This document shows, one piece after another, positions 36,189 to 59,525 of a stretch of 64,000 nucleotides of DNA. The position numbers and the translations under genes are program-made. The stretch lies in IMG/VR virus record IMGVR_UViG_3300020469_003050, positions 1-64,000 of that record; one strand, written 5' to 3'. The number at the start of each line of letters is the position of its first letter. Within the stretch, counting starts at the first letter, position 1. The notes beneath the pieces were generated by a model. It was not told the DNA's origin, did no database searches, and saw only the letters and a list, made by a program, of their open reading frames with translations.

Positions 36189-36217
36189 TTGACACTGCAA
36201 CGAATCTGTGTTATTAT
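36189..36217 (+). promoter_or_regulatory. sigma70-type promoter with CGAATC box
   Basis: TTGACA-N6-CGAATC-N5-TATTAT. Confidence 0.7.
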
Positions 36218-36255
36218 TATTAACAATGAGAAAACATTTTACGAGGCGTTCAGGT

Positions 36256-36411
36256 ATGTATCAACTAAACTTAAAAGAACTTTCAGTAAAAGAATTACTA
36301 AAAGAATTTTACAGAATACGACATAAAGGTTCACCTTCACACGAAGATTTAATGAAGTGGCTGGAAGTCTATTCCGAACTATCTTATCGGAAAATTAAAA
36401 TAGAAGAATAA
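36256..36411 (+). CDS. hypothetical protein
   Basis: Short ORF after the promoter; start uncertain. Confidence 0.5.
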   Translation: MYQLNLKELSVKELLKEFYRIRHKGSPSHEDLMKWLEVYSELSYRKIKIEE

Positions 36412-36419
36412 ATATATGT

Positions 36420-36689
36420 ATGTTATACGTCATACTATTCTTTTGTGGAGTTTTAGTTGCTATGGTTATTAGTGCAGTTTGGATGCATGAAAAATCATAT
36501 AGTATACCTAAAATTGCACCTGATCCAATGGAACAAAGAGTAGCAGATATCAAAAATAGAATCGAAGCAGTACAAGAGAAATTCAAATCACCTACTTTAA
36601 AAGAAATAGAAAAACAATCTACGCAACAACATCGAAATGCAGAAATGGATGAAATGCGAAGAAAGTTAATGCCAAAAAGTGTTTCTTGA
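36420..36689 (+). CDS. hypothetical membrane-anchored protein
   Basis: N-terminal TM plus helical tail. Confidence 0.65.
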   Translation: MLYVILFFCGVLVAMVISAVWMHEKSYSIPKIAPDPMEQRVADIKNRIEAVQEKFKSPTLKEIEKQSTQQHRNAEMDEMRRKLMPKSVS

Positions 36690-36772
36690 AATCTACGTTC
36701 AGTAATGAACATATAAGACAAGAGCGGGTTGTTACGAAATAAACACGTAAGGGGTCACGGTTAGCCCCTTAA

Positions 36773-36780
36773 GATAAATA
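36773..36780 (+). promoter_or_regulatory. late promoter GATAAATA
   Basis: Upstream of tRNA-Thr. Confidence 0.55.
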
Positions 36781-36799
36781 TACACGTAGTTAATAATGT

Positions 36800-36874
36800 G
36801 CTGATGTGGCTCAACGGTAGAGCAACTGATTTGTAATCAGTAGGTTGGAGGTTCGATTCCTTTCATCAGCACCA
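36800..36874 (+). tRNA. tRNA-Thr(TGT)
   Basis: GCTGATG/CATCAGC acceptor, ACTGA-TTTGTAA-TCAGT, TTCGATT, ACCA. Confidence 0.95.
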
Positions 36875-36892
36875 CAACAAGAAAGGTAAATA

Positions 36893-37111
36893 ATGAAGCC
36901 AGGCGAAGCAATAATCCTAGCCGCACGTAAACAAGCGGAAGGTGAAATAGCGGTTCATCTAGCAAACATACAAGTCTATCAAACTATGCCAGCAGGTATT
37001 GGTGAACATTCAGATGTTACCGAGGCAGTGATTGAAGAACTTAATAAACTAGCGGCCGCTTATGACAGATTAGAAATGATTGAAAAATATTTCACAACTA
37101 AATCTGAATAA
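36893..37111 (+). CDS. hypothetical protein
   Basis: PAGIGEHSD motif; AAGG RBS. Confidence 0.75.
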   Translation: MKPGEAIILAARKQAEGEIAVHLANIQVYQTMPAGIGEHSDVTEAVIEELNKLAAAYDRLEMIEKYFTTKSE

Positions 37112-37120
37112 CAAAATTTA

Positions 37121-37204
37121 GCCCATGTGGTGAAATTGGTAGACACGCAGGTTTTAGGTACCTGTTCTTACGGAGTGGGGGTTCAAGTCCCTCCATGGGC
37201 ACCA
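37121..37204 (+). tRNA. tRNA-Leu(TAG)
   Basis: GCCCATG/CATGGGC, CAGGT-TTTAGGT-ACCTG, long variable arm, ACCA. Confidence 0.95.
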
Positions 37205-45637: not shown

Positions 45638-47125
45638 ATGAACATAACATTAATGCTACTATTCATTGTAGCCGTAGGATTTGTAGCCTACAAGTCTAAA
45701 GGGGATAATTACTTTCTGACAACATCAGATAGCAATATGAACCTTGGGCTTTCTTATGGAGCAACGTTAATTTCAACGTCTGCTATCATAGGCTTTGGAG
45801 GTCTAGCTGGTTGGATTGGATTTTCTATTCCACTCACAATGATTATTCCATTTGTGGGTCTTATATATCTTGCGACTGTTTATATAGGTCCAAAGGTATA
45901 CAAAGCTAACAAGAAAATTAAAGCCAAAACGTATATTGAAATGATTGGTAAACATTATAACACACCAATGATTTCAAAATTACTAGCACTCATTACTGTG
46001 GGATTAATTCCATTCTATTGTGTTGCAGTTCTTATAGGTGTCGGTAAATTTATTACTGCATTTACAGGAATTGACTTTACTTTAGCAGTAGTTGGTTTTA
46101 GTATTCTAGTTTTTGGAACTATCGCATACGGTGGAATGAGTTCTGTACTTAAAAATGATATGGTACAAGGTGTCATTGTCATTGCAGGGTCACTTGTCGT
46201 ATTAGCAATCACAGTATTCGTGCATATGCAGGCTCCCGGTTTTTGGGATAACTTATCAGATGCATGGTTACTAGTACCAGAAGATGATGGATTGCGTAAA
46301 CTTAGTTTTACAGGATTTACTAGCTGGCCAGAGTTTTGGTCTAGAGGCTGGTTAATGATTACTACATTATTAGTATTCACTATTCCAGTAGGACTTATCA
46401 CTTTGCCTCAACTACAAACACGTTGGATGATGGCTAAAGATGAAAAGAGTTTTAAAACTATTGCAAATTGGGGTGTTATTATCCCAGGTCTAGCAATCAT
46501 AACGTTTATGTTAGCGGCAATCTCTGCCAACTCATATACGTTTGCTACAGAAGGTATGACAGTTGCACAAGCGGCTGGAGGAACTGCTAGTATTGTTCCT
46601 TATTGGATTAAGACAGGGTTCCCAGCATGGGTTTCTAGTGCTTTATTCTTAACTATTTTGGCGGCGGCGTTTACAACTCTTAATAGTTTGATGCATTTGT
46701 TATCAACAACAATAGCCAATGATATTATATCTACAAAGACACCAAGTCTTAAAGTAGCATATGGTTCGATGGTTGCAGTTATTTTACTAGCACTTTGGAT
46801 GACAATTCAATTCAATGGGCAAATGGCAATTATTGCACGTGCTACTGCATTATACTTTGGTATCATTGGTGCAAGTATGTTACCACTAGTCATTGGAATG
46901 GCAAGAGGACTATCTAATGGTCGTCATGCACTTGCAAGTTTTATTGGTGGTGCAGTAACAAGTATCGGTTGGGTACTATTCGTACACTTCAAAGAATCAA
47001 AGTTGTTCACTGGTATCACATATGATATTGGTGTGTATAACTTTGTTGAACCAATCGTTCCTGGTTTAATTGTATCTGGTGTAATCTTTATTGCACTAAC
47101 ATATATTAGACCAACAATCAAATAA
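45638..47125 (+). CDS. sodium:solute symporter (SSS family)
   Basis: ~13 TMs; ISTSAIIG.GG, YGGMSSV..ND..QG, LPQL..R, AAAFTT.NS. Confidence 0.88.
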   Translation: MNITLMLLFIVAVGFVAYKSKGDNYFLTTSDSNMNLGLSYGATLISTSAIIGFGGLAGWIGFSIPLTMIIPFVGLIYLATVYIGPKVYKANKKIKAKTYIEMIGKHYNTPMISKLLALITVGLIPFYCVAVLIGVGKFITAFTGIDFTLAVVGFSILVFGTIAYGGMSSVLKNDMVQGVIVIAGSLVVLAITVFVHMQAPGFWDNLSDAWLLVPEDDGLRKLSFTGFTSWPEFWSRGWLMITTLLVFTIPVGLITLPQLQTRWMMAKDEKSFKTIANWGVIIPGLAIITFMLAAISANSYTFATEGMTVAQAAGGTASIVPYWIKTGFPAWVSSALFLTILAAAFTTLNSLMHLLSTTIANDIISTKTPSLKVAYGSMVAVILLALWMTIQFNGQMAIIARATALYFGIIGASMLPLVIGMARGLSNGRHALASFIGGAVTSIGWVLFVHFKESKLFTGITYDIGVYNFVEPIVPGLIVSGVIFIALTYIRPTIK

Positions 47126-47197: not shown

Positions 47198-47578
47198 ATG
47201 GCATACAGTAAAAAAGTAATGGACCATTATAACAATCCACGTAATGTAGGTCGTTTCGATCCCAGTGTAGATAAAGTTGGAACTGGGATGGTAGGAGCGC
47301 CGGCATGTGGTGACGTAATGCGTTTACAGATACAAGTTGAAGACGGAGTTATAAAAGATGCTAAATTTAAAACTTATGGTTGCGGAAGTGCAATAGCAAG
47401 TTCAAGTTTAGTAACTGAAATGGTTAAGGGTAAGACATTGAAAGAGGCTCAAGAAATTAAAAACATGGACATAGTAGATGAGTTATCTTTACCTCCAGTA
47501 AAAATACATTGCAGTGTTTTAGCCGAAGATGCGATTAAATCCGCAATAGAAGATTTTAAAAGAAAGTACCACAGATAA
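47198..47578 (+). CDS. iscU: Fe-S cluster scaffold IscU
   Basis: YS.KVMDHY.NPRNVG, GAPACGD, FKTYGCGSA, LPPVKIHCS. Confidence 0.96.
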   Translation: MAYSKKVMDHYNNPRNVGRFDPSVDKVGTGMVGAPACGDVMRLQIQVEDGVIKDAKFKTYGCGSAIASSSLVTEMVKGKTLKEAQEIKNMDIVDELSLPPVKIHCSVLAEDAIKSAIEDFKRKYHR

Positions 47579-48144: not shown

Positions 48145-48159
48145 ATCATACCTAAAAAC

Positions 48160-48189
48160 TTGACATATCTCCGAATCGTGTTATATTAT
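48160..48189 (+). promoter_or_regulatory. early promoter with CGAATCG box
   Basis: TTGACA-N6-CGAATCG-TGT-TATATT. Confidence 0.75.
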
Positions 48190-48211
48190 ATACATGATGA
48201 AGGAGAAAGTT

Positions 48212-48682
48212 ATGAACAAATATGTTATCGAAACTGCTATCCGTGAAAACTATGCCGCTCATAATTCAGATTGGGACGGTGAGAGTTCTTATTGGAAGAA
48301 CAAAGGTGGTAGCACCTATGTTGTCGAAGCCAGCAGTTATGATGAGGCTTCATCTGTTATAGATTTAGTTACATCTTCAAACAATGCATACGAAGAAAAC
48401 TTCTTTGATTGTTATCAAGTTGATGGTAACTTTGAGTCAGAATTTGTAAAATCACAAAAAGAGTACGACCCAAAAGGTTGGGAAACATTATACCTTGATA
48501 ATGTTATTCGTAAGAATAGCAAAGGCGATTGGTATATGAAACGTGGTTATATCGTTGGTGGATTCCAGGAAGGAACAGAATATGAACATCTTATTGGTAA
48601 GTTTGTTGGTAATGTTGATAACCTTAGTACAGGCGAATGCGTCCTTAAAATTGAAGGCGATACCCGTACAAGTCTAGTTTAA
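48212..48682 (+). CDS. hypothetical early protein
   Basis: AAGGAG RBS; ENY...YWKNKGGSTYVV. Confidence 0.8.
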   Translation: MNKYVIETAIRENYAAHNSDWDGESSYWKNKGGSTYVVEASSYDEASSVIDLVTSSNNAYEENFFDCYQVDGNFESEFVKSQKEYDPKGWETLYLDNVIRKNSKGDWYMKRGYIVGGFQEGTEYEHLIGKFVGNVDNLSTGECVLKIEGDTRTSLV

Positions 48683-48695
48683 TATAGGAGATATA

Positions 48696-48878
48696 ATGAT
48701 TACATTTACGTTTAAAGCATATGGTAAGACTTTCAAAGCAAAAGCAGAGAAAGGTCTTGATGTTATGGAGAAAGCAAATAAAGAATTGCTTTGGTCTAAT
48801 CCTGTTTCAAAAGACGGTGCTTGGTTCGAAGAAGGCACGACAGGATATAAGTGGGTAGAAGGTAATTTTTTCGACTAA
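48696..48878 (+). CDS. hypothetical early protein
   Basis: AGGAG RBS. Confidence 0.75.
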   Translation: MITFTFKAYGKTFKAKAEKGLDVMEKANKELLWSNPVSKDGAWFEEGTTGYKWVEGNFFD

Positions 48879-48881
48879 AAC

Positions 48882-48909
48882 TTGACAATATCACGAATCG
48901 TGCTATATT
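48882..48909 (+). promoter_or_regulatory. early promoter with CGAATCG box
   Basis: TTGACA-N6-CGAATCG-TGC-TATATT. Confidence 0.75.
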
Positions 48910-48941: not shown

Positions 48942-49337
48942 ATGACACAGTTTGACAAAGAAAAATTTCATTATCACGGTGGATACTTAATGTATCACGG
49001 TACATATGAAGGTCAGCCTTCATATGAAGAAGTTTATGGCAAAGATAAAATTCATCCTTCACGTATTGGAATGCCAGTAGAACTATTCATTGCTCGTTTC
49101 AAGTACGTATTTTTTCAAGGTGCTTTTAAGAACTTCCTAGTTAAAAACTTCACAGTTGAAGAATTTGCTGAAGGTTACAAAGCTGGTAAGTCACCATTAG
49201 ACATGCTAGAGGCAAAAGGTTTTATGACTCCTCAAGCAAAGAAATTGTGTAAGCAAAACGGTATGAAGCCTACACAAGAGAACTATAAAATTTGCATTCG
49301 TGCTATGTCAGAAAAATATATAAACGAGGCCGCATAA
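48942..49337 (+). CDS. hypothetical early protein
   Basis: AAGGAG RBS; FIARFKY...FLVKNFTVEE. Confidence 0.8.
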   Translation: MTQFDKEKFHYHGGYLMYHGTYEGQPSYEEVYGKDKIHPSRIGMPVELFIARFKYVFFQGAFKNFLVKNFTVEEFAEGYKAGKSPLDMLEAKGFMTPQAKKLCKQNGMKPTQENYKICIRAMSEKYINEAA

Positions 49338-52414: not shown

Positions 52415-55400
52415 ATGCGATTGCACGAATTTAAAATAGAAAAGCCCAAACCAGAAGATACTATGGGTATCACTAGAGACAAAATGCCTCAAGTGAAATC
52501 TACAGATTATGATGCATATAAATCTTATCTTAAAAAGAATGGTGTCACATTAAGACCACAAGTAGTACATGCAAAAGATTTAAAACCAGTACAATCAGAA
52601 TTTTCAGACCAAGGCGTTGAAAGACAATTAAACAAGAATAGAGAAAATGATGGACAGAACCCAAAACCTCTACTAGCAAGTAGTGACGATTGGATTATAG
52701 ATGGTCATCATAGATGGTTAGCCGCTTTAAACTCAAATAGAAACGTAAGTATTTTACGTGCAAATGTTGATGTGCATGAACTTTTATCCTTGACTTTAAA
52801 ATTTCCTAGTGTATACTTCAAAGATATCTACACAGAAGAGGAAGAGTCAATGGACGTGATTCAAAAAGCAGAGAAGTTTGCACAAGAGGCACACAAAGAC
52901 CATCAGAGAAAGTACACTGGTGATCCTTATTATGTCCATTTAGATGAAGTTAGAAACATAGTAAAACAAGCAGGCGGTACTGTAGAACAACAAGCGGCCG
53001 CTTTATTACATGATACAGTTGAAGATACAAGTGTTACACCAGTAGATGTAACAAGAGAATTTGGTCCTAAGATTGCTAAACTAGTTGTTGAACTTACTGA
53101 TGTAAGTAAACCAGAAGACGGTAATAGAAAAACACGTAAAGCAATCGATAGAGATAAACTAGCAGGTGTTAGTGCAGAAGCACAAACAGTTAAGTATGCA
53201 GACTTGATAAGCAATGGCAGAGACATAGGTAAAAATGACCCTAAGTTTGCTAAAGTGTATCATGCTGAAAAGGCAGATTTGCTAAGAGTTATGACAAAGG
53301 GTAATCAGAATTTAAGAAAACAAGCTATCGCATTATTACCTGATGAATTAAAATCAGTAGTAGGTGAGGCGTTTGGCAGAGCAAACTTTAACAAGCAATT
53401 AAAAAGAAAAGGCATCGATGTAGATAAGATGCATTCAGATAATGTTAAAGATGCTGAGGCATCTAAGAAAAGAAGTAAAGATGCAGAAGATGATTTAAAA
53501 GCATTTAGAAAAAAGCATGGCATAAAAGAAGAAACACCTTTCGGTTTACTTTCTCGTAAGATGAGTCATGTAATTAATAAAAAAGCATATATGAATATGG
53601 CACAGATGATGCATAAGATACTTACAAGAAAGTATAAAGAAACTAATGGTAAGTTAAGACATTCACTTGCCTATTATGCACAAATGTTAGCAATGCAAAC
53701 AAACAACAAAATAAACTATCGTGAACTTGAAAAAGAATACCTTGATATGTTTGGTAACGCAATGTTTGAAAACTCAGTTAAAGAGTCTTTAAACGAAGAA
53801 GCACTAAATGTTAAATCTATTATTACTCCTGCTATTCGTAAACTAGATAAAGTATTTAAAAAGAATAAACACGAAGTAAGAATTGTTGGTGGTGCAGTAA
53901 GAGATATCGCATTAGGTAAAGAGCCAAAAGATATTGACTTTGCCACAGATGCTACACCAGATGAAATGATTGCTATGCTTGATAAAGAAGGCATAAGACA
54001 TATTCCTACAGGTATAGAACATGGTACAATAACTGCGGTTATTGATGGAGAAGATTTTGAAATAACAACTTTACGTGCAGATACAAATACAGATGGTAGA
54101 CATGCTGATGTAGAATTTGTACGTTCATGGGAAGAAGATGCTAAACGTAGAGATTTAACATATAACGCAATGTCAATGGACATGGACGGTACAGTACATG
54201 ATTACAATGGTGGTATGGACGATTTACAAGATAAAGTAAGTAGGTTCGTAGGGGATCCAGAAGAAAGAATTAAAGAAGATTATTTGCGTATCTTAAGATA
54301 CTTTAGATTTCAATCTAAGTTAGATAGTCCAAAGTGGGACGATACTACATTAAATGCAATCAAAGATAATGCAGACGGTATGACAGGTTTATCTGTTGAA
54401 AGAATTTGGCAAGAAATGGGCAAATTGTTAATGGGTTCAAGTGCCAAAGAAGCACTTGAGTGGATGAACAAGACAGGCGTATCAAGTAAGATTGGACTTG
54501 AAGGTATCAATCCAGCTAAACTAGGTGAGCCTACAGGACCTATTATTGCACTTGCAAGAATGCTAGACAGTAGTGGTATTGCAAGAGATTGGAAGATGAG
54601 CAATTACGATAGAGAAATGTTTGACTTCTTAATCAAGCACAAAGGTGAAAACATAAATTCAAAACAAGCACAAGATATGATTATCAATGGTGCATCACAA
54701 GACCATTTACTTGCATGGGCAAACATGCATGGTAAGAATGATGTATATGATGCAGTACACGGATTTGAACAACCAGACTTCCCAATCAATGGTAAAGACT
54801 TACTAGCAAGAGGTTATGTAGCTGGTCCTAATCTTGGTAAGATGATTGCTGATTTAAAAGATGAGTGGATGAAATCTAACTATAAACTAAGCAAAGAACA
54901 ACTACTAAGCAAAGTTCCAGTTAGAGAAAATGCACTATTCGAAGCGGTTGCTAGATTTATGACAGGACATGGTATTACTTACAAAGGTAAGAAGTATGAT
55001 GAAATGAATGTAGAAGTAGTAGGTGTTGATAATGAAAAGAGACAATATCAAGTAATGATATTTGATCCAGAAGAATTACGTGGTGTAAATGTTATGATGA
55101 GTGCAAGATTTATGCACAGAGGCCCATGGGTTAAGACAAAGATACCTGATTACATGGGAGCAATAGAAAAAGGTTTAGATAAAGATAAGACAGATGAATG
55201 GATAGTTCCTGTTGGACAAGCAATAGCACATGGCGCCAGAATGGCGGCACCTCATGTAGCGAAGTTTCTGAGAAATGACCCTGCACCTAAGATAGCAGGT
55301 GGAGTTACATCAACAGGTGCGGCATATAATTGGGCAAAAAATAAGTACGATAGTTTTAAGAATAAGAAAAGTACAAAGCCAACAACGACAACAGAAGCAG

Positions 55401-56065
55401 AGACATCTACACCAGATGTATATGTTGATATGGACGGTGTGTTAGTTGATTTCTTCAATGAATGGGCTAGACTAGTTGGCGTTAAGTCATACAGAGATAT
55501 ACCAAAGAAAGATATAGGCAAAGCATTAAAGAAGATTGTTAGTACTCCAAACTTCTGGGAAGACTTGCCAACATTAGCAGGTTACAAAGATTTGCTACAA
55601 ACAATTAAGGCTGTAAAAGGCAAATACAAAATATTGAGTTCCCCTCTAGCAAATGATCCTAACGTAGATCCTGGCAAAAGAGAGTGGGTGAGAAAACATT
55701 TAAACTTCTTTAAACCAGAGCAAGTTATCATTGACCATAATAAATCAAAATATGCAAAGAAACAAGACGGTAGTCCGAACTTGTTAATTGATGATTTTGG
55801 TAAGAATGTCGATGCATGGCAATCAGCTGGTGGTATCGCAATTAAACATCACACAACAACTACTGCAAATACAGTACAAGCAATTAAGAAAGTATTCAGT
55901 ATAAAAGATGTTAAAGAAGCGGCTGGCGTAGGTAGAGTTATACCTGGCATAAATACCACAGTTGACGTAGGTCCCAACGAAATTACTAAACAAGCTAAAA
56001 AGTTTGGTAATGATGTAGATAAAGATGGGAAACCTAAGAAGCTACTGCGTACAAAGAAAAAATGA
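52415..56065 (+). CDS. multidomain protein: ParB/Srx-like + HD (Mesh1/SpoT-type) + CCA-adding tRNA nucleotidyltransferase + HAD 5'-nucleotidase-like
   Basis: IIDGHHRW; AH..QRK..PY..H...LLHDTVEDT...VKYAD..SN; VGGAVRD..DIDF, RRDLTYNAM, EDYLRILRYFRF; DMDGVL...LLIDD. Confidence 0.9.
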   Translation: MRLHEFKIEKPKPEDTMGITRDKMPQVKSTDYDAYKSYLKKNGVTLRPQVVHAKDLKPVQSEFSDQGVERQLNKNRENDGQNPKPLLASSDDWIIDGHHRWLAALNSNRNVSILRANVDVHELLSLTLKFPSVYFKDIYTEEEESMDVIQKAEKFAQEAHKDHQRKYTGDPYYVHLDEVRNIVKQAGGTVEQQAAALLHDTVEDTSVTPVDVTREFGPKIAKLVVELTDVSKPEDGNRKTRKAIDRDKLAGVSAEAQTVKYADLISNGRDIGKNDPKFAKVYHAEKADLLRVMTKGNQNLRKQAIALLPDELKSVVGEAFGRANFNKQLKRKGIDVDKMHSDNVKDAEASKKRSKDAEDDLKAFRKKHGIKEETPFGLLSRKMSHVINKKAYMNMAQMMHKILTRKYKETNGKLRHSLAYYAQMLAMQTNNKINYRELEKEYLDMFGNAMFENSVKESLNEEALNVKSIITPAIRKLDKVFKKNKHEVRIVGGAVRDIALGKEPKDIDFATDATPDEMIAMLDKEGIRHIPTGIEHGTITAVIDGEDFEITTLRADTNTDGRHADVEFVRSWEEDAKRRDLTYNAMSMDMDGTVHDYNGGMDDLQDKVSRFVGDPEERIKEDYLRILRYFRFQSKLDSPKWDDTTLNAIKDNADGMTGLSVERIWQEMGKLLMGSSAKEALEWMNKTGVSSKIGLEGINPAKLGEPTGPIIALARMLDSSGIARDWKMSNYDREMFDFLIKHKGENINSKQAQDMIINGASQDHLLAWANMHGKNDVYDAVHGFEQPDFPINGKDLLARGYVAGPNLGKMIADLKDEWMKSNYKLSKEQLLSKVPVRENALFEAVARFMTGHGITYKGKKYDEMNVEVVGVDNEKRQYQVMIFDPEELRGVNVMMSARFMHRGPWVKTKIPDYMGAIEKGLDKDKTDEWIVPVGQAIAHGARMAAPHVAKFLRNDPAPKIAGGVTSTGAAYNWAKNKYDSFKNKKSTKPTTTTEAETSTPDVYVDMDGVLVDFFNEWARLVGVKSYRDIPKKDIGKALKKIVSTPNFWEDLPTLAGYKDLLQTIKAVKGKYKILSSPLANDPNVDPGKREWVRKHLNFFKPEQVIIDHNKSKYAKKQDGSPNLLIDDFGKNVDAWQSAGGIAIKHHTTTTANTVQAIKKVFSIKDVKEAAGVGRVIPGINTTVDVGPNEITKQAKKFGNDVDKDGKPKKLLRTKKK

Positions 56066-57408: not shown

Positions 57409-57645
57409 ATGAAAATAAACGAATTATTAGGTGAAAATTTTAGTGGTAGTTTCGCTAGTGTGGCATTTCCAATGACACCGGGAACGAAGGCTAAAGATGC
57501 CAGAAAGGCAGTAGATCCTTTTGGGTATCTAACACCTAAGAATAAAAAGAAACAAGAGAACTATAAGATGGGTTTTTCTGCCGATGTAGGTAACTTAGTT
57601 TATAATAAGCCTGTCAAGAGTCCAATGATTAAGAGAGCAAAATAA
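57409..57645 (+). CDS. small putative internal head protein
   Basis: MKINELLGE N-terminus. Confidence 0.65.
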   Translation: MKINELLGENFSGSFASVAFPMTPGTKAKDARKAVDPFGYLTPKNKKKQENYKMGFSADVGNLVYNKPVKSPMIKRAK

Positions 57646-59525
57646 TGAAACTTACACAATTAACCGAGAGTTTTGTAATCAATAACGATGAGTTTGAAGA
57701 TTACTTAAACCGTGGTACGGAACAACTCAAAACAGAATTAGAAGGTGGCAAGAATGCCCGTGATGCAATACATGATATTGCACAGACATTTTCAAGCCAA
57801 CATAATAAATCATACGAAGCATATGAACGTATGTCAGATAGTCTAGCGGCTAGAATGCACACACTAGATTTAGGTGGTGGTGAAAGTCTTCCTGCAATGG
57901 CTCCTGAAGTTCCAGCAATGGATCCTGAAGCACCAAGTGATATGGACATGTCTCCAGAACAACCAGATATGGATGTGGCTCCAGAACAACCAGGTATGGA
58001 TATGGAAACACCAGATGCAGAAGAAATGCCAAACGATGAAGAAATGGCAGACTATGATGCGGTAATGGCGAATAAGCCTGATGATACAGAAGAAAGTATC
58101 GAAGAATCTTCAACTGCTCTTAAAAATAAAGAAGATTATATGGCTAAACGTAAAGCATTACAAGATATTCAGATGGACCCTGACACAAGTAAAAACGAAG
58201 AACTTAAAAAAGAATTAATGCGTAGAAAAGCAGAACTTGAAGACCAAGCAAAAGCAATGGGTATTAAAGAAGGCACTATGATTGGTGGCTTAATGAAATA
58301 TGATGGTCAACCAGAAGAAGAATATTCTGAGGCTGTTGCAAAATATAATGAGTTTATGTCTAAACCTCGTCCAGCGAGTGAAGAAACAAGTGACATGATT
58401 ATGGGATTTGTTTTTGATGATGAACTATTAGATGATATGTACGTTGCACAAGACGAAGGTAACAAAGATGTTAGACCTATGGTTGCTAAGAGAATGGAAG
58501 AACTTGGTCATGCAAATGAATCAGTTTCAGAAGCAGATGAAAAACCATACATTTGTGTACATGCTGATAAAGGCAAACACGAATGTCATGCGACTTCTTC
58601 ATACGGAGCGGCTAAAAAGGCGGCTGAACATTGGGGAATGAAATCAACTGCTGGTATCGATGCAAATTTGGCAGTAGAAGAATCAGCAATGATTGAAGAA
58701 GGTGCAATGGATACTCTAAAGAAAATTGTAGCAGACAAACAAAACATGCCTGTTAAATTTGATGATGGTCAGATGAAAGTAGATTTATTTACTGCATCGG
58801 CTGTTACACAAGTTTATGATAAAGTAAACGATGCTAACAGAGAAAAAATTGACAACATGCTAAAAACTAAAGCTGGTATGCTTAAGATTGCAGACTTTGC
58901 CTTAGGTTCTATGAAAGAAGGCAAACTAGATACTGCTATGAACGTAGCAAAGAAAGTAGGTCAAGTAGCTGGTAAAGTTAAACAAGGCGCTGACATGGCT
59001 AAGAAAGGTATTGATACTGCAAAAGCTATAGGTAAATCTGGTCCTGCTCAAGCGGCTGGTGGAATTATCGGTAAAGTAGCAAAAGCCGTTGGTGCTGGTA
59101 TACAAAATAAGGCATCAGATTTAACTGGTGGACAAATCAAAAAGTCTAAAGTAAAAGTATTCAATGCAGACGATGTAGCAGACAGAATTGTTAACAATTC
59201 GGCTAGAATTGCAATGTCAGAGTACAATGAATTCTACAAAGAACTAGATAAAGCGGCTAAGCAAGGTAAGAAAGCTGGTGACTCTATCTCAGTTGGTGGT
59301 AAGAACATCAAACTAAAATCTAATCCAAAGAAAATGTCAGACCTAACTGACTCAGACTTTGTAAAGATTGATGCACTTGCACAGAAAGTAAATGAATTGG
59401 CTCCATTAGCCCCATTAGCGGGTGCGGCGGCAAGAGCCATTGGTGGAAAAGTTATCAAAAAAGCGATTAAGGCAAGTCCAGGTGCAAAGTTTGTCAGTGC
59501 AATGACAGGCGGAAATAAAGAATAA
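57645..59525 (+). CDS. multi-module putative internal head/core protein
   Basis: MKLTQLTE start; M/P/D/E-rich linker; modules separated by IEE, IKE, VSE, VEE, MKE, MSE, VNE. Confidence 0.65.
   Translation: MKLTQLTESFVINNDEFEDYLNRGTEQLKTELEGGKNARDAIHDIAQTFSSQHNKSYEAYERMSDSLAARMHTLDLGGGESLPAMAPEVPAMDPEAPSDMDMSPEQPDMDVAPEQPGMDMETPDAEEMPNDEEMADYDAVMANKPDDTEESIEESSTALKNKEDYMAKRKALQDIQMDPDTSKNEELKKELMRRKAELEDQAKAMGIKEGTMIGGLMKYDGQPEEEYSEAVAKYNEFMSKPRPASEETSDMIMGFVFDDELLDDMYVAQDEGNKDVRPMVAKRMEELGHANESVSEADEKPYICVHADKGKHECHATSSYGAAKKAAEHWGMKSTAGIDANLAVEESAMIEEGAMDTLKKIVADKQNMPVKFDDGQMKVDLFTASAVTQVYDKVNDANREKIDNMLKTKAGMLKIADFALGSMKEGKLDTAMNVAKKVGQVAGKVKQGADMAKKGIDTAKAIGKSGPAQAAGGIIGKVAKAVGAGIQNKASDLTGGQIKKSKVKVFNADDVADRIVNNSARIAMSEYNEFYKELDKAAKQGKKAGDSISVGGKNIKLKSNPKKMSDLTDSDFVKIDALAQKVNELAPLAPLAGAAARAIGGKVIKKAIKASPGAKFVSAMTGGNKE

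What the first reader, a model, noticed from the sequence alone, without database searches (positions are those of the whole stretch)
48160..48909. Early promoters carry a fixed-position CGAATC(G) box, matching a CcrM/GcrA-type site
Seen: three promoters (36189, 48160, 48882) share TTGACA-N6-CGAATC, and two extend to AAACTTGACA-N6-CGAATCGTGYTATATTA. Established: GANTC is the alphaproteobacterial CcrM methylation site, and GcrA activates sigma70 promoters at methylated YGAKTCG-type sites (reverse complement here CGATTCG). Inference: a class of early genes is wired to host- or phage-encoded GcrA and methylation state, pointing to an alphaproteobacterial host.
Basis: partly seen in the sequence, partly recalled or inferred. 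Interest (0 to 1): 0.6.

Follow-up and report, generated by a model that had tools for sequence, protein, structure and literature searches.

The report
Phage promoters with fixed GANTC box
A widespread marine jumbo phage drives about twenty genes from near-consensus host-type promoters that all carry a GANTC box at one fixed spot, the spot where the alphaproteobacterial cell-cycle factor GcrA grips methylated DNA on RNA polymerase; this suggests, but does not prove, that the phage ties its gene expression to its host's methylation and cell-cycle machinery.

Summary
TTGACA-N6-CGAATC occurs 3 times in the window and 10 times in the 342.6-kb phage genome, always on the + strand, with none in the control. 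About 27 promoters share AACTTGACA plus an extended -10 (TGnTATAnT). Twenty of these carry NGANTCN at exactly spacer position 7. Across relatives in marine viromes, 56 of 70 box-blind promoters have GANTC in that register, and all 44 distinct boxes fit the published GcrA preference YGAKTCK. The register and strand are identical to the promoter on which GcrA was visualised by cryo-EM (TTGACA-N6-CG(m6A)ATC). GANTC is the most depleted comparable word in coding DNA (O/E 0.54) but not in intergenic DNA (1.03), as in CcrM-bearing bacteria. An unrelated small phage, akin to Pelagibacter phages, shares both the promoter and the GANTC depletion.

Gaps remain. The phage encodes neither GcrA nor a CcrM-type or other detectable DNA methyltransferase. 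The host is unidentified. Cultured SAR11, OM43, Sinorhizobium and Agrobacterium phages lack the box. "Early" timing and transcription starts are not shown.

Verdict: a host-factor-dependent promoter class, most likely GcrA/CcrM-type (about 0.5). It is a new variant of a known mechanism.

The parts
36189..36217 (+). Box promoter P36189. -35 TTGACA 36189-36194; N6; box CGAATC 36201-36206 (GANTC 36202-36206); TGTGT with extended -10 TG at 36209-36210; -10 TATTAT 36212-36217; 17-bp spacer.
   Evidence: The register is the same as the GcrA cryo-EM scaffold TTGACA-N6-CGAATC-N5-TATAAT.
36226..37204 (+). Likely transcription unit of P36189: small ORFs 36226/36256-36411 and 36420-36689, then tRNA-Thr 36800-36874 and tRNA-Leu 37121-37204.
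   Evidence: There is no terminator-like site in between. That these form one transcription unit is inferred, not shown.
48156..48187 (+). Box promoter P48160. AAAC context; -35 TTGACA 48160-48165; N6; box CGAATC 48172-48177; G; TG 48179-48180; -10 TATATT 48182-48187; 16-bp spacer.
48188..48211 (+). Conserved start and leader region (aTATACATgAT, family consensus TATACATAAT) followed by the Shine-Dalgarno AAGGAG.
   Evidence: The leader is conserved across family members. Its role is unknown, and the transcription start is inferred only.
48212..48682 (+). ORF of 156 aa of unknown function, the first gene behind P48160.
   Evidence: No PHROG match.
48696..48878 (+). ORF of 60 aa of unknown function. 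The stretch 48681-48877 is skipped in one contig of a related strain, so this is a present/absent cassette bounded by the next promoter copy.
48878..48909 (+). Box promoter P48882. AAAC context; -35 TTGACA 48882-48887; N6; box CGAATC 48894-48899; G; TG; -10 TATATT 48904-48909; 16-bp spacer.
   Evidence: Assembly contigs break here because the promoter is repeated.
48942..49337 (+). ORF of 131 aa (phrog_22119, unknown function), the first gene behind P48882.

Best explanation
These are host-RNA-polymerase (sigma70-type) promoters of a marine jumbo phage. A GANTC site is built into the -35/-10 spacer at a fixed position, with GAATC at about -21 to -17. The most likely mechanism is as follows. 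The host's CcrM-type enzyme methylates the adenines of GANTC. The host's GcrA, riding on sigma70 region 2, binds the methylated box on the face of the spacer opposite RNA polymerase. This stabilises polymerase binding and open-complex formation. A class of non-late phage genes would then be expressed most strongly when the host has GcrA and the phage DNA carries the mark.

Shown here: the promoter family, the fixed box, the degeneracy of its flanks, its conservation across relatives, the genome-wide GANTC bias, and the absence of phage-encoded GcrA and DNA methyltransferases. Inferred: promoter activity and start site, methylation, GcrA binding, host identity and timing.
For: (1) Family and fixed register. 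In G000 about 27 AACTTGACA promoters lie on the + strand in intergenic DNA, 34-60 nt before ORFs, and 20 carry NGANTCN at spacer position 7.
(2) Conservation in relatives. In 70 distinct clade promoters collected without specifying the box, GANTC starts at +13 in 56 and at +12 in 3. A second peak at +6 (6 promoters) occurs in either orientation. Background is about 0.2 per position. N6 varies freely while the box does not.
(3) Flanks. All 44 distinct boxes (CGAATCG/A, AGAATCA, CGATTCG) fit YGAKTCK on one strand, where 8 of 32 contexts would do so by chance. The published GcrA motif is TGATTCG or YGAKTCK.
(4) Geometry. GcrA sites in activated promoters are narrowly centred around -20. The cryo-EM scaffold with GcrA bound reads TTGACA-CCCGGG-CG(m6A)ATC-CCTGC-TATAAT on the non-template strand. 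That is the same N6 register and the same strand as the phage box, and the same 17-bp spacer as P36189.
(5) GANTC bias. GANTC is the most depleted of 16 XYNY'X' words (O/E 0.58-0.66). It is also the lowest of 24 comparable words in coding DNA (0.54) yet stands at 1.03 in intergenic DNA. This mirrors CcrM-bearing Alphaproteobacteria.
(6) Host rather than phage factor. An unrelated small tailed phage (L020 type: TerL, SPP1-type portal, HK97-fold capsid) uses the same promoter. Its only detected protein similarity to G000 is a generic fibre-repeat domain, with no candidate shared regulator. It also depletes GANTC (O/E 0.64), unlike cultured pelagiphages (1.04 and 0.78).
(7) Host class hints. The nearest cultured relatives of the jumbo phage by DNA polymerase are Sinorhizobium phage Phosso (48%) and Agrobacterium phage Atu_ph07 (45%). 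The small phage's capsid matches only Pelagibacter phages well (56-59%).
(8) Distribution of the factors. GcrA is widespread in the class, found over the family cut-off in 195 of 301 sampled species, including genomes of 0.9-1.4 Mb. CcrM is reported even in SAR11.
Against: The host is unknown, and no direct link (CRISPR, prophage, single cell) was found.

The promoter pattern is absent from the GTDB species genomes, and a looser composite is absent from 301 alphaproteobacterial genomes.

Cultured phages of GcrA/CcrM hosts do not use the box. Phosso and Atu_ph07 have 0-1 hits, equal to the control. Pelagibacter phages HTVC026P, HTVC111P and HTVC008M have none. No cultured phage matches the promoter by blastn.

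G000 lacks the near-total GCNGC avoidance seen in two cultured SAR11 phages, so those SAR11 strains are unlikely hosts.

The purine after the box can also be explained by the RTG preference of extended -10 promoters (own knowledge), so one of the two flank matches is not independent.

Depletion of GANTC in coding DNA is context-independent (0.63 against 0.58). That fits any GANTC-specific enzyme, including a HinfI-type restriction system.

The near-identity of the whole 45-nt promoter between the two phage lineages suggests recent transfer rather than independent selection.

There is no transcription-start or methylation data. RNA-library contigs cover the region but cannot show starts.
Confidence: 0.5

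Rival explanations
1. The box is the site of some other protein or polymerase contact. It could be an operator for a phage-encoded or non-GcrA host regulator, or a lineage-specific core-promoter spacer element read by RNA polymerase itself. On this view the resemblance to the GcrA site is coincidental.
For: A conserved spacer box is not unique to this clade. Another marine phage (L212/L213) has a repeated promoter family with a different spacer box, ACCGGT, at about the same place. About 7 of 27 family promoters work without a box, or at least exist without one. Cultured phages of alphaproteobacteria lack the box. The conserved leader TATACATAAT shows that more than sigma70 and GcrA requirements are conserved.
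Against: The conserved unit is the palindrome-with-N, GANTC. The centre flips between A and T, and a second GANTC occurs in either orientation, as expected for a GANTC reader. Flanks, strand and register coincide with the GcrA site in several independent respects. GANTC is singled out genome-wide. No small protein is shared between the two phage lineages that share the promoter, although only parts of the small phage contigs were held.
Confidence: 0.2
2. The host is not an alphaproteobacterium but carries a GANTC-specific restriction-modification system or orphan methyltransferase (HinfI/CcrM-like). The phage avoids GANTC because of restriction. The promoter box is a methylation-sensitive switch read by polymerase or another factor, as with Dam sites in some coliphage and transposon promoters.
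For: GANTC depletion in coding DNA is independent of the GcrA-preferred context. CcrM homologues occur sporadically outside Alphaproteobacteria. GATC and CGCG are also strongly depleted (O/E 0.25 and 0.27), which shows that restriction avoidance shapes this genome. Most cultured members of the wider Rak2/GAP32 group infect Gammaproteobacteria. The phage IscU is of gammaproteobacterial type, although it circulates among phages.
Against: A phage under GANTC restriction should purge the site from promoters too, not fix it at one position in about 20 promoters. The flank degeneracy and the exact GcrA geometry are left unexplained. The nearest cultured relatives of both lineages are phages of Alphaproteobacteria.
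Confidence: 0.15
3. The box has no function of its own. The whole roughly 45-nt promoter-plus-leader is a mobile cassette copied within and between co-infecting phages, and the box is conserved by recent common descent.
For: Promoters in the unrelated small phage are almost identical over their whole length to some G000 copies. Cassette-like gain and loss occurs next to promoter copies. Many copies in G000 share N6 variants such as AATATAG and AAATAG.
Against: Within the clade (protein identity down to about 55%), N6 and the upstream flank diverge freely while the box stays. Box information content is comparable with that of the -35 and -10. Changes in the box are confined to forms that keep GANTC and the YGAKTCK flanks (44 of 44). 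Shifted or second GANTC sites recur.
Confidence: 0.1

Closest known systems
GcrA-activated, CcrM-methylated sigma70 promoters of Caulobacter crescentus (e.g. PcsM, PmipZ; Haakonsen 2015 PMC4647560; Wu 2023 PMC9976885)
   Same: Sigma70-type promoter. GANTC lies in the -35/-10 spacer centred near -20. Flanks fit YGAKTCK. The register is identical (TTGACA-N6-CGAATC) and on the same strand as the scaffold in the GcrA-RNAP cryo-EM structure. The genome shows GANTC depleted in coding DNA but not in intergenic DNA.
   Different: Here the promoters sit in a phage, not in a cell-cycle regulon. They are near-consensus (TTGACA plus extended -10), whereas cellular GcrA targets are usually weak promoters. 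The box position is rigid in about 20 copies. Methylation, GcrA binding and host are untested.
Host CtrA-controlled promoters in phages of Alphaproteobacteria (Mascolo 2022, PMC9437464); phiCbK-like phages encoding GcrA homologues; Sinorhizobium phages encoding CcrM analogues
   Same: A phage wires its transcription to a host cell-cycle regulator of Alphaproteobacteria.
   Different: That work found CtrA sites but no signal for GcrA sites in phage genomes. Here the candidate regulator is GcrA, the site sits inside the core promoter, and the phage encodes neither GcrA nor CcrM.
T4 middle promoters (MotA box) and other phage promoter classes with an extra fixed element in a sigma70 promoter (own knowledge)
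   Same: A phage promoter class defined by a sigma70 -10 element plus a fixed-position extra box read by a sigma70-associated factor.
   Different: The MotA box replaces the -35 and is read by phage-encoded MotA/AsiA. Here the -35 is intact, the box lies in the spacer, and no phage factor is evident.
Methylation-sensitive promoters with Dam GATC sites (IS10 pIN, phage P1 cre, Mu mom; own knowledge)
   Same: An adenine-methylation site inside or next to promoter elements makes expression depend on methylation state.
   Different: Different site (GATC), different hosts (Gammaproteobacteria), single promoters rather than a roughly 20-member family, and no sigma70 cofactor.

Membership tests
GcrA/CcrM-dependent sigma70 promoter | Sigma70-type -35 and -10 elements | tested here: met
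   TTGACA, 16-17 bp spacer, TGnTATAnT. Each site scores 11 of 12 with TG and is the best site in its region. The family consensus is given.
GcrA/CcrM-dependent sigma70 promoter | GANTC site centred at about -20 (spacer) or at +2 to +30 | tested here: met
   GANTC starts at +13 from the first T of TTGACA in 56 of 70 clade promoters. This puts GAATC at about -21 to -17 if the start lies 7 nt after the -10. The start site is inferred, not measured.
GcrA/CcrM-dependent sigma70 promoter | Flanks of the site fit the GcrA preference YGAKTCK | tested here: met
   44 of 44 distinct boxes fit, where chance would give 8 of 32 contexts. Caveat: the 3' purine may also reflect the extended -10.
GcrA/CcrM-dependent sigma70 promoter | Adenines of the GANTC are N6-methylated by a CcrM-type enzyme | not testable with these tools
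   No methylome data. The phage has no PF01555, PF02086 or PF00145 methyltransferase. The PF05063 test was uninformative.
GcrA/CcrM-dependent sigma70 promoter | GcrA present (host- or phage-encoded) and required for activation | tested here: inconclusive
   Phage-encoded GcrA is absent. The host is unknown. GcrA is present over the cut-off in 195 of 301 sampled alphaproteobacterial species (one of them, G044, is unpublished, and the claim does not depend on it). Activation was not testable.
GcrA/CcrM-dependent sigma70 promoter | Genome context of a CcrM organism: GANTC under-represented overall and in coding DNA, tolerated or enriched in intergenic DNA | tested here: met
   O/E is 0.54 in coding DNA (lowest of 24 words) and 1.03 in intergenic DNA. 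GANTC is the lowest of 16 words overall.
Phage early promoter class | Expressed early, from host polymerase, and distinct from late promoters | tested here: inconclusive
   The box class is distinct from a late-like tGATAAATAca class. That class precedes fibre genes next to the capsid gene and 39 genes in all. Box promoters drive small ORFs, tRNAs, MoxR/VWA, AAA, FG-GAP, a lyase and a cell-wall hydrolase. There is no timing data.

The most novel reading that the evidence does not exclude
A cosmopolitan, uncultured marine jumbo phage clade, together with an unrelated small phage of the same host, gates its host-polymerase-dependent gene class epigenetically. The promoters would fire fully only when the incoming or replicating phage DNA carries CcrM methylation at the built-in GANTC box and the host is in the GcrA-rich phase. 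Infection would then be timed to the host cell cycle, and the mark inherited from the previous host cell would act as a licence. As a corollary, the box would be a sequence signature that assigns uncultured marine phages to GcrA/CcrM-bearing alphaproteobacterial hosts.
Probability: 0.3. Interest if true: 0.8.

Novelty: new variant of a known kind. Interest (0 to 1): 0.62.

Why it matters
If true, this would be the first phage promoter family hard-wired to the GcrA/CcrM epigenetic module, a system so far studied as a bacterial cell-cycle device. A previous scan of alphaproteobacterial phages found CtrA sites but no GcrA signal. It would show that abundant ocean phages read their host's methylation and cell-cycle state. 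It would offer a simple motif for assigning hosts to uncultured marine phages. It would also provide near-consensus, naturally optimised GcrA-box promoters for testing how far GcrA activation depends on methylation and spacing.

Tried and rejected
1. Phage-encoded GcrA or CcrM. No PF07750 match. The two weak PF01555 signals are a radical-SAM/SPASM enzyme and a sugar C-methyltransferase. No PF02086 or PF00145 match. The PF05063 test was uninformative.
2. Host from auxiliary genes. The Na+:solute symporter is clade-specific, with cellular homologues at only about 33%. IscU looked like a gene of an abundant bacterium, but its 83-85% homologues lie on related jumbo-phage contigs. The nearest cellular IscU homologues are gammaproteobacterial. 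Neither gene gives a host signal.
3. Host from promoter twins. The strict promoter pattern is absent from GTDB species genomes, and a looser composite is absent from 301 alphaproteobacterial genomes.
4. Cultured phages. Megablast of the region found nothing, and blastn of the promoter found nothing. Phosso, Atu_ph07 and RaK2 lack the box, as do HTVC026P and HTVC111P and HTVC008M, Melnitz and C48C1.
5. Shared receptor-binding fibre as a host link. The shared domain is a generic YadA-like repeat of many marine phages, so this lead was rejected.
6. Transcript starts from metatranscriptomes. Only assembled contigs were available. They break at the repeated promoter and cannot show starts.
7. Other lineages with single box matches (RNA ligase/Pnk phage, primase-helicase phage, RNR contig). 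A few chance hits are expected for 17 specified bases, so these were not used.
8. SAR11 as the specific host. It is weakened by the absence of the box in cultured pelagiphages and by a different restriction-avoidance profile: GCNGC is nearly absent in the two podoviral pelagiphages examined but stands at O/E 1.29 in G000.
9. The literature on marine jumbo phages gave no host for this group.

Full report
WHAT THE WINDOW IS. The window is the first 64 kb of a 342,607-bp viral record with 34.8% GC. It has a 93-bp exact end repeat, and IMG/VR classes it as having direct terminal repeats. By DNA polymerase and capsid it belongs to the Rak2/GAP32/Atu_ph07-type jumbo myophages. The best cultured polymerase matches are Sinorhizobium phage Phosso (48%) and Agrobacterium phage Atu_ph07 (45%), followed by enterobacterial, Xanthomonas and Vibrio jumbo phages (41-43%). 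The capsid gene lies at 194.5 kb. Near-identical DNA is present in marine, seawater and viral metagenomes; the 20 runs that hold it, metatranscriptomes among them, come from 14 studies. So this is a cosmopolitan, uncultured marine phage.

TTGACA-N6-CGAATC is present at 36189, 48160 and 48882. The longer shared string AAACTTGACA-N6-CGAATCGTGYTATATTA is at 48156 and 48878. Genome-wide the 12-base pattern occurs 10 times on the + strand, never on the - strand and never for the reversed control. The consensus scan ranks the three window sites as the best sigma70-like matches locally. Each scores 11 of 12 and has a TG extended -10. The spacer is 16 bp (48160, 48882) or 17 bp (36189).

ANATOMY OF THE FAMILY. 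About 27 sites in the genome share AACTTGACA followed by TGnTATAnT. All real-looking ones are on the + strand, in intergenic DNA, 34-60 nt before an ORF with a strong Shine-Dalgarno sequence. Twenty carry NGANTCN at exactly spacer position 7. The box varies only as CGAATC, AGAATC, CGATTC or TGATTC, followed by G or A. Seven family members have no GANTC there. Downstream of the -10 a leader, tATACATAAT or ATTAAGTAATCA, is also conserved.

A scan of IMG/VR that left the box unspecified recovered 70 distinct promoters from contigs of this clade. GANTC starts at +13 (counted from the first T of TTGACA) in 56 of them and at +12 in 3. A second site at +6, in either orientation, occurs in 6. Elsewhere the rate is about 0.2 per position. 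N6 and the upstream flank vary freely among relatives whose proteins are only 55-100% identical, whereas the box is as informative as the -35 and -10. The box is therefore under selection, and the conserved unit is GANTC.

COMPARISON WITH THE GcrA SITE. Haakonsen et al. derived TGATTCG, or more broadly YGAKTCK, as the GcrA preference among methylated GANTC sites. In directly regulated promoters they found the sites narrowly centred around -20 or spread from +2 to +30. Read on the other strand, the phage box CGAATC(G/A) is (C/T)GATTCG. All 44 distinct in-register boxes of the clade fit YGAKTCK on one strand, although only 8 of the 32 NGANTCN contexts do. One caveat applies: the purine after the box also fits the RTG preference of extended -10 promoters (own knowledge).

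Wu et al. solved the GcrA-RNAP-sigma70-promoter complex on a scaffold whose non-template strand reads TTGACA-CCCGGG-CG(m6A)ATC-CCTGC-TATAAT, with the GcrA DNA-binding domain on the spacer site. Its 17-bp spacer equals that of window promoter 36189; the other two window promoters are one base shorter. With the usual 7-nt distance from the -10 to the start, GAATC lies at about -21 to -17, against -22 to -18 in the scaffold. So sequence, degeneracy, strand and geometry all agree with a site on which GcrA can contact both DNA and sigma70.

GENOME-WIDE BEHAVIOUR OF GANTC. GANTC is the most depleted of the 16 XYNY'X' words (O/E 0.58 by dinucleotide model, 0.66 by maximal-order Markov model). Split by compartment, it has the lowest O/E of 24 comparable pentanucleotides in coding DNA (0.54) but 1.03 in intergenic DNA, the largest contrast of all the words. 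Gonzalez et al. reported the same asymmetry for CcrM-bearing Alphaproteobacteria. The coding depletion does not depend on the GcrA-preferred context (0.63 against 0.58). The pressure therefore acts on GANTC as such, which fits CcrM but would equally fit a HinfI-type restriction system.

WHO SUPPLIES THE FACTORS. The phage has no GcrA. Its two sub-threshold PF01555 signals are a radical-SAM/SPASM protein and a sugar C-methyltransferase. There is no Dam-class or C5 methyltransferase, and the MT-A70 test was uninformative.

A HOST FACTOR RATHER THAN A PHAGE FACTOR. Of the box-carrying contigs, most are syntenic relatives of G000. Nine loci (L017, L020, L060, L091, L097, L237, L271, L276, L303) belong to a different phage. 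L020 encodes a 425-aa terminase, an SPP1-type portal, an HK97-fold capsid protein and a tape measure. L091 has five box promoters in 7 kb. At blastp sensitivity the two lineages share no small protein. The only shared element is a generic YadA-like fibre repeat that many marine phages have. The small phage also depletes GANTC (O/E 0.64), unlike the cultured pelagiphages HTVC026P (1.04) and HTVC111P (0.78). Two unrelated phages thus share the promoter and the GANTC bias. This points to a common host and a host-encoded reader. However, the near-identity of the whole promoter suggests transfer between co-infecting phages rather than independent invention.

HOST: STILL OPEN. Points in favour of an alphaproteobacterium:
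- the nearest cultured relatives of the jumbo phage are Phosso and Atu_ph07;
- the small phage's capsid matches only Pelagibacter phages well (56-59%), and its terminase matches Pelagibacter and Komagataeibacter phages best among those with named hosts;
- GcrA is over the cut-off in 195 of 301 sampled alphaproteobacterial species, including many genomes of 0.9-1.4 Mb (one genome, G044, is unpublished and the tally does not depend on it);
- SAR11 has a CcrM homologue.

Points against, or neutral:
- Phosso, Atu_ph07 and RaK2 lack the box;
- so do HTVC026P, HTVC111P, HTVC008M, the OM43 phage Melnitz and phage C48C1;
- no cultured phage matches the promoter;
- no genome in the GTDB set holds the promoter;
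- the two podoviral pelagiphages examined almost lack GCNGC and GGNCC, whereas G000 has GCNGC at O/E 1.29, so those SAR11 strains are unlikely hosts;
- the auxiliary genes tried (symporter, IscU) gave no host signal.

I conclude that an alphaproteobacterial host is plausible and is favoured mainly by the promoter itself. It is not demonstrated.

IS THE CLASS 'EARLY'? A second upstream motif, tGATAAATAca, resembles the T4-type late promoter. It precedes 39 genes, including the fibre-like ORFs next to the capsid gene, and is concentrated at 200-300 kb. The box class never precedes these genes. It drives small ORFs of unknown function, tRNA-Thr and tRNA-Leu (window), a MoxR-type AAA ATPase and its VWA partner, another AAA ATPase, an FG-GAP protein, a polysaccharide lyase and a cell-wall hydrolase. 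A box-less member drives a DNA ligase. So it is a separate, host-sigma70-type, non-late class. Early timing is a reasonable inference but no more than that. RNA-library contigs cover the region but cannot show starts or strand.

VERDICT. The finding is a real promoter family with a selected, fixed GANTC box. The best explanation, at about 0.5, is activation through a host GcrA/CcrM-type system. The rivals are another box-binding factor or polymerase element (0.2), a GANTC methylation or restriction system in a non-alphaproteobacterial host (0.15), and hitch-hiking in a mobile promoter cassette (0.1). I found no report of phage promoters built around GcrA boxes. A dedicated scan of alphaproteobacterial phages reported CtrA sites but no GcrA signal. 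I rate it a new variant of a known kind, of moderate to high interest.

Noticed in passing
L212:3110-5500 and L213:3988-5450 (ENA marine contigs; L212 is from a 177-kb contig): Another marine phage has six closely spaced sigma70-like promoters of the form GGTTGACA...ACCGGT...TG(C/T)TATAnT. They carry a different conserved palindromic box (ACCGGT) in the spacer, where G000 has GANTC. Spacer boxes may be a general device of such phages.
   Followed up: no
whole genome G000 (e.g. upstream of window ORFs 7884, 12240, 17594, 29648, 49776): A second promoter-like class, tGATAAATAca, lies upstream of 39 genes (12.7-fold enriched) and resembles the T4-type late promoter TATAAATA. It precedes the fibre-like ORFs after the capsid gene.
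   Followed up: partly
whole genome G000: GATC (O/E 0.25) and CGCG (0.27) are strongly depleted, and AGCT, GCGC and GGCC stand at about 0.55. This looks like a restriction-avoidance profile. It differs from cultured SAR11 phages, which almost lack GCNGC and GGNCC.
   Followed up: partly
window 48681-48877: One metatranscriptome contig of a related strain joins 48680 directly to 48878, skipping the 60-aa ORF. This is a gene cassette present or absent between strains, bounded by a promoter copy. Contigs of several runs break at the promoter repeat.
   Followed up: no
window 45638-47125 and 47198-47578: The phage encodes a Na+:solute symporter (SSF family) set among tRNA genes, and an IscU/NifU-like Fe-S scaffold. 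Both are conserved in related marine jumbo phages (43-95% and 83-100%). Cellular IscU homologues are gammaproteobacterial in type.
   Followed up: partly
G000 80842, 169063, 337736; L011, L023, L109, L119: Some box promoters carry a second GANTC immediately after the -35 (spacer positions 1-5), in either orientation. With the main box it sometimes forms a GATTC..GAATC palindrome.
   Followed up: partly
window 52415-56065: A 1,216-aa ORF fuses an HD domain, a poly(A) polymerase/CCA-adding head domain and a 5'-nucleotidase (NT5C) domain. It is flanked by NMNAT-like and radical-SAM genes.
   Followed up: no
window 57645-59525: Residues 346-424 of this 626-aa ORF are 55% identical to a hypothetical protein of the OM43 phage Melnitz. 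There were no other cultured-phage matches.
   Followed up: no
G000 ends (1-93 and 342515-342607): The 'direct terminal repeat' is only 93 bp of exact overlap. It may be an assembly overlap of a circularly permuted or circular map rather than a true terminal repeat.
   Followed up: no
L109 (IMGVR_UViG_2778261477_000012, 26.6 kb): A contig about 96% identical at the protein level to G000 167-170 kb comes from a record whose numbering looks to me (own knowledge of IMG numbering) like a genome or single-cell entry rather than a metagenome. It could hold a host clue but could not be resolved here.
   Followed up: no
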